Assembly: GCF_006345805.1 (NCBI RefSeq)
Contig: NW_021833797.1
Span: 1 to 54,073 of the forward strand
Source: Octopus sinensis
Lineage: Eukaryota
Length of the DNA: 54,073 bases
Reading direction: 5' to 3'
Shown here: positions 45,857 to 46,126 of the stretch, piece by piece
How the letters are laid out: every line of letters starts with the position of its first letter
Position numbering within the stretch: position 1 is the first letter of the stretch
The notes under the pieces: generated by a model
The model's input: the letters and a program-made list of their open reading frames with translations, nothing else
Database searches by the model: none
Told to the model about the DNA's origin: nothing
Made by a program: the position numbers and the translations under genes

Positions 45857-46126
45857 TCAATTCGAAGATTGACCTTTTAAAGTCTCATCCCGTTTTTGCA
45901 ACTTTTTCGCCTTTATTCGGCGATTCTGGAACCAAATTTTGATCTGTCGTTCACTTAAGTTAGCAGTTGTGATAATTCCCAGCGGCGTGACTTTGAGATG
46001 TAGGTGGAGATAGCGTACTCTCTTTCTAGCTCGGCGATTTGGTACTTGGAATATGGTCTTCGCGTTTCCGTAGAGCGATCGCTGACGGCGGCAGAGCTGA
46101 CGGTAGATGGATTGCTTGTTGTAGAT
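45857..46126 (-). CDS. Post1: Post1 posterior Hox gene, homeobox (last coding) exon, with two apparent 1-bp deletions (~46062 and 45960/45961)
   Basis: Acceptor ttttcttcttgcAG at 46128-46127. Three successive frames read ...AIALRKR | [34 protein letters not shown] | [37 protein letters not shown] (45859-45857). Adding one base at each break gives an exact 60-aa homeodomain (46073-45896). [14 protein letters not shown] and YISK..RWELSQ are spiralian Post1 signatures (from memory of the family). Confidence 0.9.
   Translation of the reverse strand: [89 protein letters not shown]

What the first reader, a model, noticed from the sequence alone, without database searches (positions are those of the whole stretch)
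45857..46126. Post1 homeobox is hidden by two 1-bp deletions: error or broken Hox allele
Seen: the ORF track shows only helix 3. The N-terminal arm (IALRKR) and helices 1-2 sit in two other frames, with breaks at AAACG^CGAAGA (~46062) and CTGCTA^ACTTA (45960/1). Between the breaks the homeodomain is intact with no stops or non-conservative decay. Inference: uncorrected long-read deletions in short runs are far more likely than pseudogenisation. Annotation could miss or misname this Hox gene. A real loss of function would be notable.
Basis: partly seen in the sequence, partly recalled or inferred. Interest (0 to 1): 0.72.

Follow-up and report, generated by a model that had tools for sequence, protein, structure and literature searches.

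The report
Octopus Post1 homeobox split by frameshifts
The last exon of the octopus Hox gene Post1 is perfectly conserved but read in three frames because two single bases are missing. This is most likely a long-read assembly error, and it has already made the public annotation call a wrong 120-aa "Hox-D11-like" protein.

Summary
The window is the unplaced 54,073-bp contig VCDQ01003177.1 of the PacBio-based Octopus sinensis assembly GCA_006345805.1.

On the minus strand, 45857-46126 is one exon behind a good splice acceptor. Its homeodomain (HD) sits in three frames:
- ...[20 protein letters not shown]
- [34 protein letters not shown]
- [20 protein letters not shown]...stop

One base is missing at about 46062/3 and one at about 45961/2.

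Joined, the pieces match Pfam Homeodomain over 57/57 positions (68 bits). They are 88-93% identical to named mollusc Post1 HDs and 55% to Post2. They match 57 of 58 residues of an intact cephalopod Post1 transcript.

Against that transcript, differences by codon position are 11/3/54. Silent sites are saturated and pN is 0.04, in all three segments. There are no stops and no decay.

NCBI's model reads only helix 3 behind an unrelated upstream exon, so the gene is mis-modelled and misnamed as predicted.

Error and real lesion could not be separated, because no accurate reads or close-relative sequence were reachable. Internal controls put this contig's indel error at no more than about 1e-3 per base. 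My estimate is about 78% assembly artefact, about 12% real null allele or young pseudogene, and the rest mixed or minor readings.

The parts
46127..46145 (-). 3' splice site: polypyrimidine tract ctgttttttcttcttg followed by the cAG acceptor (AG at 46128-46127).
   Evidence: Read directly from the sequence. Similarity to the spliced cephalopod transcript L001 begins immediately after this AG. NCBI's model uses the same acceptor.
45857..46126 (-). Last coding exon of Post1, 270 nt as assembled (272 nt expected if intact). It follows a phase-1 intron, starting with 'AT' that completes a codon begun in exon 1.
46063..46126 (-). Segment in frame A: (D)LQQAIHLPSALPPSAIALRKR, the conserved pre-homeodomain motif plus the start of the N-terminal arm.
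   Evidence: It is 20/20 residues identical to P0001, with 15 synonymous and 0 non-synonymous differences. The QQ(A/S)IHLPS motif is shared with all gastropod and bivalve hits.
46060..46064 (-). Frame break 1: one base is missing within cg^cga. Every intact Post1 has R at homeodomain position 5 (RKRRRPY).
   Evidence: The exact position of the lost base is ambiguous within these 5 nt.
45962..46062 (-). Segment in frame C: [33 protein letters not shown](L), the rest of the N-terminal arm plus helices 1 and 2.
   Evidence: On its own it scores 30.3 bits against Pfam Homeodomain. Differences from L001 by codon position are 5/0/21.
45959..45963 (-). Frame break 2: one base is missing within ct^aac. 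Intact mollusc Post1 has (L/I)-N-L-S at homeodomain positions 38-41.
45857..45961 (-). Segment in frame B: [34 protein letters not shown] plus the TGA stop (45859-45857). It holds helix 3 (recognition helix) and the C-terminal tail.
   Evidence: On its own it scores 34.9 bits against Pfam Homeodomain.
45896..46073 (-). The 60-residue homeodomain (L1...Q60), 178 nt as assembled instead of 180.
   Evidence: Coordinates counted. Identity figures are, and the best solved-structure matches.
47392..47484 (-). Upstream exon used by NCBI's gene model (MTKELFSGHDRTFHTRPNSQQLLQVPLEQER, GTGAGT donor). It is not a Post1 coding exon.
   Evidence: It has no similarity to the exon-1 part of the cephalopod transcript. 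In the phase needed for the true frame (phase 1) it has a TGA four codons before the donor (read).

Best explanation
The locus is the genuine, functional-looking homeobox exon of the Octopus sinensis Hox gene Post1. Post1 is a posterior, Abd-B-related, lophotrochozoan-specific paralogue. It lies on a small unplaced contig of a PacBio long-read assembly. In the assembled consensus one base is missing in the codon for homeodomain residue 4/5 and one in the codon for residue 38/39. I infer that these are uncorrected consensus deletions rather than mutations in the animal.

Shown: the exon, its splice acceptor, the three frames, the Post1 identity, the selection signature and the faulty public gene model.

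Inferred: that the two missing bases are artefacts. As a result, the gene predictor could keep only the frame that runs to the stop codon (helix 3). It bolted on an unrelated upstream ORF to supply an ATG, producing a 120-aa 'Hox-D11-like' protein that lacks the N-terminal arm and helices 1-2. The true first exon is not detectable in the 7.9 kb of contig upstream and probably lies beyond the contig end.
For: - Provenance. The window is VCDQ01003177.1, 54,073 bp, from GCA_006345805.1. That is a PacBio + Hi-C assembly with 13,516 scaffolds, only 86% of bases in chromosomes and 5.2% duplicated BUSCOs.
- Conservation. The composite homeodomain matches 57/58 residues of an intact cephalopod Post1 transcript and 88-93% of named mollusc Post1.
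- Selection. Codon-position differences from that transcript are 11/3/54. pN is 0.04 with synonymous sites saturated. The pattern holds separately in each of the three frame segments.
- No other damage. There is no stop codon, no other indel, and the acceptor site is intact.
- Both lesions are single-base deletions. Each can be a contraction of a 2-3 base run (CC or GG; AAA or TT), the classic residual error of long-read consensus (established knowledge).
- Neutral decay fits poorly. Neutral repeats in this window show 0.06-0.09 one-base gaps per mismatch. A real neutral decay would therefore be expected to carry many replacements per indel. The chance of at most one homeodomain replacement before the second indel is about 0.02-0.07.
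- Precedent. Frameshift errors in Hox1, Hox2, Post-1 and Post-2 sequences of another mollusc had to be corrected in silico (PMC5103448).
Against: - No accurate reads, second assembly or close-relative sequence could be reached. The collection holds no other octopod copy of this exon, either intact or frameshifted.
- Internal controls do not show a generally error-ridden contig. A 1.17-kb repeat pair at 95% identity has only three 1-bp gaps against 23 mismatches. The regression intercept over 158 repeat pairs suggests an indel error of about 1e-3 per base or less. Two errors in 270 nt then have P of about 0.03 at best and 4e-4 at 1e-4 per base.
- One study reports genome-wide BUSCO completeness of 95.7% for this assembly, although another table lists 50%.
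- A 2023 study of the sister species O. vulgaris could not study Post1, nor four other Hox genes. These were 'not found' in transcriptomes or genome, or could not be amplified (PMC10509229).
Confidence: 0.78

Rival explanations
1. The two deletions are real germline mutations. Post1 would then be a null allele in the sequenced O. sinensis individual, or a very young unprocessed pseudogene in the O. vulgaris/O. sinensis lineage.
For: The contig's background indel error looks modest, so two errors 101 nt apart are not expected. Post1 could not be recovered from O. vulgaris embryonic transcriptomes, the draft genome or PCR. Octopods have already lost other Hox genes, Hox2 and Hox4. NCBI's model shows no sign of transcript-based frame correction.
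Against: Every other feature is that of a gene under strong constraint. Replacement change is 0-2 per segment against saturated silent change. There are no stops and the acceptor is intact. With the window's own ratio of 1-bp gaps to substitutions (0.06-0.09), two indels would normally come with a dozen or more replacements. P(at most 1 in the homeodomain) is about 0.02-0.07. Two independent frameshifts on one segregating allele of a developmental regulator is improbable. Other cephalopods (Argonauta, Architeuthis, the species behind L001) keep Post1.
Confidence: 0.12
2. Mixed case: one deletion is a real mutation, either a heterozygous or fixed frameshift, and the other is an assembly error.
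For: A single real frameshift needs fewer coincidences than two. A single assembly error in 270 nt is not rare at 1e-3 to 1e-4 per base.
Against: The same conservation argument applies: there is no decay downstream of either break. This reading needs both a rare biological event and an error in the same 101 nt.
Confidence: 0.05
3. The contig is a redundant copy, either a haplotig or a recent unprocessed duplicate. The working Post1 would then lie elsewhere in the O. sinensis genome, so this copy's state says nothing about the gene.
For: The contig is unplaced. About 14% of the assembly is outside chromosomes and 5.2% of BUSCOs are duplicated, so haplotigs are likely to be common.
Against: The protein search found only one O. 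sinensis protein sharing any part of this exon, namely the model from this contig (cluster of 1 member on 1 contig). An intact second copy would very probably have been predicted and found. This is absence of evidence only.
Confidence: 0.04
4. The mRNA is decoded through the breaks, either by two programmed -1 ribosomal frameshifts or by RNA editing.
For: Only a loose lead from established knowledge: coleoid cephalopods edit their mRNAs heavily.
Against: A-to-I editing changes bases and does not insert them (established knowledge). Neither break has an X XXY YYZ slippery heptamer (read). Every orthologue encodes the homeodomain in a single frame.
Confidence: 0.01

Closest known systems
Mollusc Post1 homeodomains (Lottia, Crassostrea, Antalis, land snails) as listed in the supplement of PMC12328838
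   Same: 51-54 of 58 comparable homeodomain residues are identical. This includes the Post1-specific stretch EREY..[15 protein letters not shown](I/L)[20 protein letters not shown], with I54 and A56. The upstream QQ(A/S)IHLPS motif is shared with unnamed gastropod and bivalve homologues.
   Different: Residue 11 is Y rather than F, residues 21-22 are AI, and residue 38 is L rather than I. As assembled, the reading frame is broken at residues 4/5 and 38/39.
Intact cephalopod Post1 transcript: P0001 / locus L001 2280-2573, a Logan contig of run SRR25158152, species not identified
   Same: 57/58 homeodomain residues and 20/20 pre-homeodomain residues are identical. The stop position is the same. 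The transcript continues upstream without an acceptor site, so it is spliced.
   Different: It has a single open frame with RKRRRPY and LLNLS. DNA identity is only about 75%, so it comes from a distant cephalopod and says nothing about recent events in Octopus. The contig is chimeric, with a 631-aa tyrosinase ORF on the other strand.
Lophotrochozoan Post2 and Drosophila Abd-B (PDB 5zjq), human HOXA9, HOXC9 and HOXB13
   Same: All are posterior-class homeodomains sharing the (K/R)KRKPYSK arm and the RWEL motif. Abd-B is the best solved-structure match at 76.7 bits, followed by HOXA9, HOXC9, HOXB13 and HOXA13.
   Different: Identity is only 55% to Post2 and 59% to Abd-B. Those proteins have M54 and a different helix 1-2 sequence.
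Indel errors of long-read or homopolymer-prone sequencing that fragment gene models
   Same: The lesions are single-base deletions that break an otherwise perfectly conserved ORF and lead to a truncated or mis-modelled protein. In another mollusc, Hox1, Hox2, Post-1 and Post-2 sequences needed in-silico frameshift correction (PMC5103448).
   Different: Here the artefactual nature is inferred and not shown. The contig's background indel rate looks moderate.

Membership tests
Homeodomain (Pfam PF00046) | Full-length match to the profile above the curated cut-off. | tested here: met
   The composite scores 68.3 bits over 57/57 profile positions against a cut-off of 22.9. The frame-C and frame-B pieces alone score 30.3 and 34.9 bits.
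Homeodomain (Pfam PF00046) | Helix-3 signature W48, F49, N51, R53. | tested here: met
   KIWFQNRR is present in frame B.
Homeodomain (Pfam PF00046) | Encoded in one uninterrupted reading frame. | tested here: not met
   As assembled, three frames are needed. This concerns the assembled sequence, not necessarily the animal.
Posterior-class Hox (Abd-B / PG9-13) | Closest characterised homeodomains are posterior-class. | tested here: met
   The top solved-structure matches are Abd-B, HOXA9, HOXC9, HOXB13 and HOXA13, ahead of Ftz, Ubx, Scr and Antp. One synthetic engrailed tandem chain (6m3d_C, 72.7 bits from two summed repeats) ranks second.
Lophotrochozoan Post1 orthology group | Homeodomain much closer to named Post1 than to Post2. 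| tested here: met
   Identity is 88-93% to Lottia, Crassostrea, Antalis and land-snail Post1, against 55% to Post2. The supplement text had OCR slips (SOL for SQL, NRMRK for NRRMK), which I corrected by eye.
Lophotrochozoan Post1 orthology group | [quoted passage not shown] | not testable with these tools
   NCBI's record shows only this one gene in the 18 kb of the contig that was retrieved, and I found no other conserved coding sequence in the rest.
Lophotrochozoan Post1 orthology group | Complete gene with first exon and start codon. | tested here: not met
   A tblastn search with the exon-1 part of L001 finds nothing in 46127-54073. Exon-1 sequence evolves fast and only 47 residues were available, so this negative is weak.
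Processed (retrotransposed) pseudogene | No intron boundary, and cDNA-like continuity upstream of the homeobox. | tested here: not met
   Homology to the spliced transcript stops exactly at a polypyrimidine tract plus AG acceptor.
Old unprocessed pseudogene | Relaxed constraint: replacements, stops and several indels. | tested here: not met
   pN is 0.04 with saturated pS. There are no stops in the correct frames and only the two 1-nt gaps.
Programmed -1 ribosomal frameshift site | X XXY YYZ slippery heptamer at the shift site. | tested here: not met
   Neither ...CGG AAA CGC GAA... nor ...CAA CUG CUA ACU... contains such a heptamer (read). No stimulatory structure was looked for.

The most novel reading that the evidence does not exclude
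The two deletions are real. Octopus sinensis, and possibly the whole O. vulgaris species complex in which Post1 could not be recovered in 2023, would then carry a freshly inactivated Post1. That would be a Hox gene caught at the very moment of loss, in a lineage that has already shed Hox2 and Hox4 and has reduced its shell.
Probability: 0.12. Interest if true: 0.6.

Novelty: already known. Interest (0 to 1): 0.25.

Why it matters
This is practical rather than conceptual. The O. sinensis assembly and its NCBI annotation are used as the reference for the O. vulgaris species complex. In that annotation, Post1 appears only as a 120-aa 'Hox-D11-like' protein whose first 85 or so residues are not Post1. 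Surveys of cephalopod Hox complements, orthology pipelines and probe design will therefore miss or misclassify the gene. This may contribute to Post1 being 'not found' in such work.

If the frameshifts were real, this would be a recent Hox gene loss in an octopus, which evo-devo researchers would care about. The evidence makes that the minority reading.

Tried and rejected
- I looked for accurate-read or independent-assembly copies of the exon. The 5.8-billion-protein search returned only one cephalopod relative (P0001, a distant species) and NCBI's own model. Cluster look-ups added no members or names. Exact look-ups of the two frameshifted ORFs found nothing. The negatives are uninformative.
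- I looked for exon 1 with tblastn and blastn using L001. Nothing was found upstream of 46127.
- I tested whether NCBI's upstream exon could be the true exon 1 read in another frame. It cannot: in the required phase it has a TGA four codons before the donor, and it has no similarity to Post1.
- I tried to name the paralogue from database names. These were unhelpful ('Hox-D11-like', 'hox-c11', 'Hox-D9-like'). A full-text search for peptide strings found nothing. Four supplements held no sequences. The fifth, PMC12328838, settled it.
- I looked for literature on the quality of the O. sinensis assembly. The assembly paper is not held, as is the O. bimaculoides genome paper. One broad search was wasted and a search for 'low quality protein' found nothing. 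The BUSCO figures conflict: 95.7% against 50%.
- I used internal controls for the contig's indel error. The mariner remnant has one stop and one frameshift in an A7 run, so it does not discriminate. The repeat-pair statistics give only an upper bound.
- tRNA and Rfam scans of the window found nothing.
- I considered recoding or RNA editing and rejected both on sequence and on established knowledge.

Full report
**What the window is.** An exact look-up of the protein annotated at this locus identifies the window as VCDQ01003177.1. This is a 54,073-bp contig of Octopus sinensis assembly GCA_006345805.1. The literature describes that assembly as PacBio plus Hi-C, with 13,516 scaffolds, 86% of bases in chromosome-scale scaffolds and 5.2% duplicated BUSCOs. 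The window is AT-rich (26-44% GC). It is full of microsatellites, SINE-like repeats and a mariner remnant. No tRNA or Rfam family was detected.

**Checking the observation.** On the minus strand, a polypyrimidine tract and AG (46145-46127) precede an exon that runs from 46126 to the TGA at 45859-45857. The three translations show:
- Frame A: (D)LQQAIHLPSALPPSAIALRKR, then junk.
- Frame C: [33 protein letters not shown](L), then a stop.
- Frame B: junk, then [34 protein letters not shown] and the stop.

The only ORF a mechanical scan lists is the frame-B one, 45857-46150, which carries helix 3 alone. The frame changes lie at cg^cga (46064-46060) and ct^aac (45963-45959). Each needs one added base.

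Joined with X at the junctions, the peptide matches Pfam Homeodomain over 57/57 positions at 68.3 bits. The frame-C and frame-B pieces pass the curated threshold on their own.

**What it is.** The best solved-structure matches are Abd-B, HOXA9, HOXC9, HOXB13 and HOXA13, so this is a posterior-class Hox homeodomain. Database names of the nearest proteins were uninformative. The supplement of PMC12328838 lists named homeodomains:
- Lottia, Crassostrea, Antalis and land-snail Post1 read [56 protein letters not shown].
- Post2 reads GRKKRKPYTRYQTMVLENEF...

The window's composite is 88-93% identical to the former, 55% to Post2 and 59% to Abd-B. All named Post1 have R at position 5. All the mollusc ones have N at position 39. 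These are exactly the two residues whose codons are damaged here. The Post1 call is therefore confirmed.

The exon is not a processed copy. Similarity to a spliced cephalopod transcript stops exactly at the acceptor.

**The closest intact relative.** P0001 is a 97-aa ORF on a 3.4-kb Logan contig of run SRR25158152, locus L001. It reads through in one frame with RKRRRPY and LLNLSERQ. The contig is transcript-derived: there is no acceptor at the junction, and Post1 coding sequence continues upstream. It is also chimeric, with a tyrosinase ORF on the other strand. DNA identity to the window is about 75%, so it comes from a distant cephalopod.

With one N inserted at each break, the codon alignment gives differences of 11, 3 and 54 at codon positions 1, 2 and 3. 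Nei-Gojobori counts are 59 synonymous and 8 non-synonymous differences (pN 0.04, pS saturated). The pattern holds in every segment:

| Segment | Differences at codon positions 1/2/3 |
|---|---|
| A | 1/0/14 |
| C | 5/0/21 |
| B | 5/2/19 |

. All three frames have thus been under strong purifying selection for essentially the whole time since divergence.

**Consequence for annotation.** NCBI's protein for the locus (P0024, 120 aa, 'homeobox protein Hox-D11-like') reads MTKELFSGHDRTFHTRPNSQQLLQVPLEQER followed by [55 protein letters not shown] and then [15 protein letters not shown].... Its first exon is 47484-47392, with a GTGAGT donor. It is spliced to the true acceptor but in frame B.

That exon has no similarity to Post1. 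In the phase the true frame needs, it has a stop codon four codons before the donor (read). Only the last 35 or so residues of the model are Post1. The true exon 1 was not found in the 7.9 kb upstream and probably lies beyond the contig end.

**Error or real lesion?** No tool reached accurate reads or a close relative.
- The protein collection holds no other octopod copy of this exon, either intact or frameshifted.
- The O. sinensis assembly paper is not held.

The judgement is therefore indirect.

For the artefact reading:
- The assembly is long-read and the contig is unplaced.
- Both lesions are single-base deletions that could be contractions of 2-3-base runs.
- The exon is otherwise flawless.
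- An old pseudogene is excluded by the selection signature.

For a young pseudogene, I measured the window's own neutral ratio of one-base gaps to substitutions in 158 repeat pairs. It is 0.06-0.09. With that ratio, reaching a second indel with at most one replacement in the homeodomain has a probability of about 0.02-0.07.

Against the artefact reading:
- The contig does not look generally error-ridden. A 1.17-kb repeat pair at 95% identity has 23 mismatches but only three 1-bp gaps.
- The regression intercept suggests an indel error of about 1e-3 per base or less.
- Two errors in 270 nt then have a probability of about 0.03, falling to 4e-4 at 1e-4 per base.
- Wollesen and colleagues could not study Post1, nor four other Hox genes, in O. 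vulgaris. [quoted passage not shown]

A rough Bayesian combination gives a posterior for error of 0.37-0.998 over plausible inputs, centred near 0.9. It depends on assumed mutation rates and on the prior for gene loss. I discount it somewhat and give about 0.78 for artefact and 0.12 for a real double lesion. The rest goes to a mixed case, a redundant copy, or recoding. Recoding is rejected because there is no slippery heptamer and because A-to-I editing inserts no bases.

**Comparison with what is known, and novelty.** Post1 is a well-known lophotrochozoan posterior Hox gene. It is reported in Argonauta and Architeuthis. Frameshift artefacts in error-prone sequence are well known too, and in one mollusc study they affected Post-1 itself. 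Nothing here is a new kind of feature.

The value of the finding is a concrete curation point for a widely used reference annotation. There is also a small chance of a recent Hox gene loss.

**Verdict.**
- Observation: confirmed.
- Post1 identity and annotation consequence: confirmed.
- 'Assembly error rather than pseudogene': favoured but unproven.
- Interest: low to moderate.

Noticed in passing
window 30615-31395 (-): A mariner-type transposase remnant with the DDE region (...VMFHQDNAQPHTAKI...PHPSYSPDLAPSDYHLF...). It lacks the N-terminal part. It has one in-frame stop and one frameshift that falls in an A7 run at 30845-30851. This is another single-base frame break at a homopolymer on this contig, but it does not discriminate between error and mutation.
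   Followed up: partly
window 10880-12037 and 15143-16304: A 1.17-kb inverted repeat pair at 95.2% identity, with 23 mismatches and 10 gap events of which three are 1 bp. I used it as an internal control for indel error.
   Followed up: yes
window 2656-2881, 6673-6860, 12109-12515, 15005-15232, 17568-18113, 21383-21464, 46313-46446 and others: A SINE-like family of roughly 190-230 bp present in a dozen or more copies at 85-95% identity. One copy lies in the Post1 intron about 190 bp upstream of the acceptor. ARAGORN finds no tRNA and Rfam finds no match.
   Followed up: no
window 24233-24743: A stretch of about 510 bp that aligns to its own reverse complement at 86% identity, so it is a long palindrome or hairpin-forming repeat.
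   Followed up: no
window 43935-45458: A 1.5-kb block of trinucleotide arrays (ATT, GAT, TGA, ACG, TAA, TTA) starting about 400 bp beyond the Post1 stop codon. It generates long spurious ORFs on both strands (poly-I, poly-H, poly-R). Some arrays change phase internally (I-run to L-run at about 45232-45296).
   Followed up: partly
window 46147-46170 and 45715-45800: The homeobox exon is flanked within 20-60 bp by simple sequence. On the intron side there is a (GATT)n / (TCAA)n run. In the 3' UTR there is a CT-rich block with a poly-T run. Such flanks could hamper short-read polishing, but this is an inference only.
   Followed up: no
L001 234-2129 (-) and 2160-2573 (+): The Logan contig carrying the intact cephalopod Post1 transcript is chimeric. 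It has an uninterrupted 631-aa tyrosinase ORF on the opposite strand, abutting the truncated 5' part of Post1. The species of run SRR25158152 was not identified.
   Followed up: no
literature: Two papers give very different BUSCO completeness for the same O. sinensis assembly. A table in PMC7566022 lists 50.0%, while PMC10700109 reports 95.7% (metazoa_odb10). The reason was not resolved.
   Followed up: no
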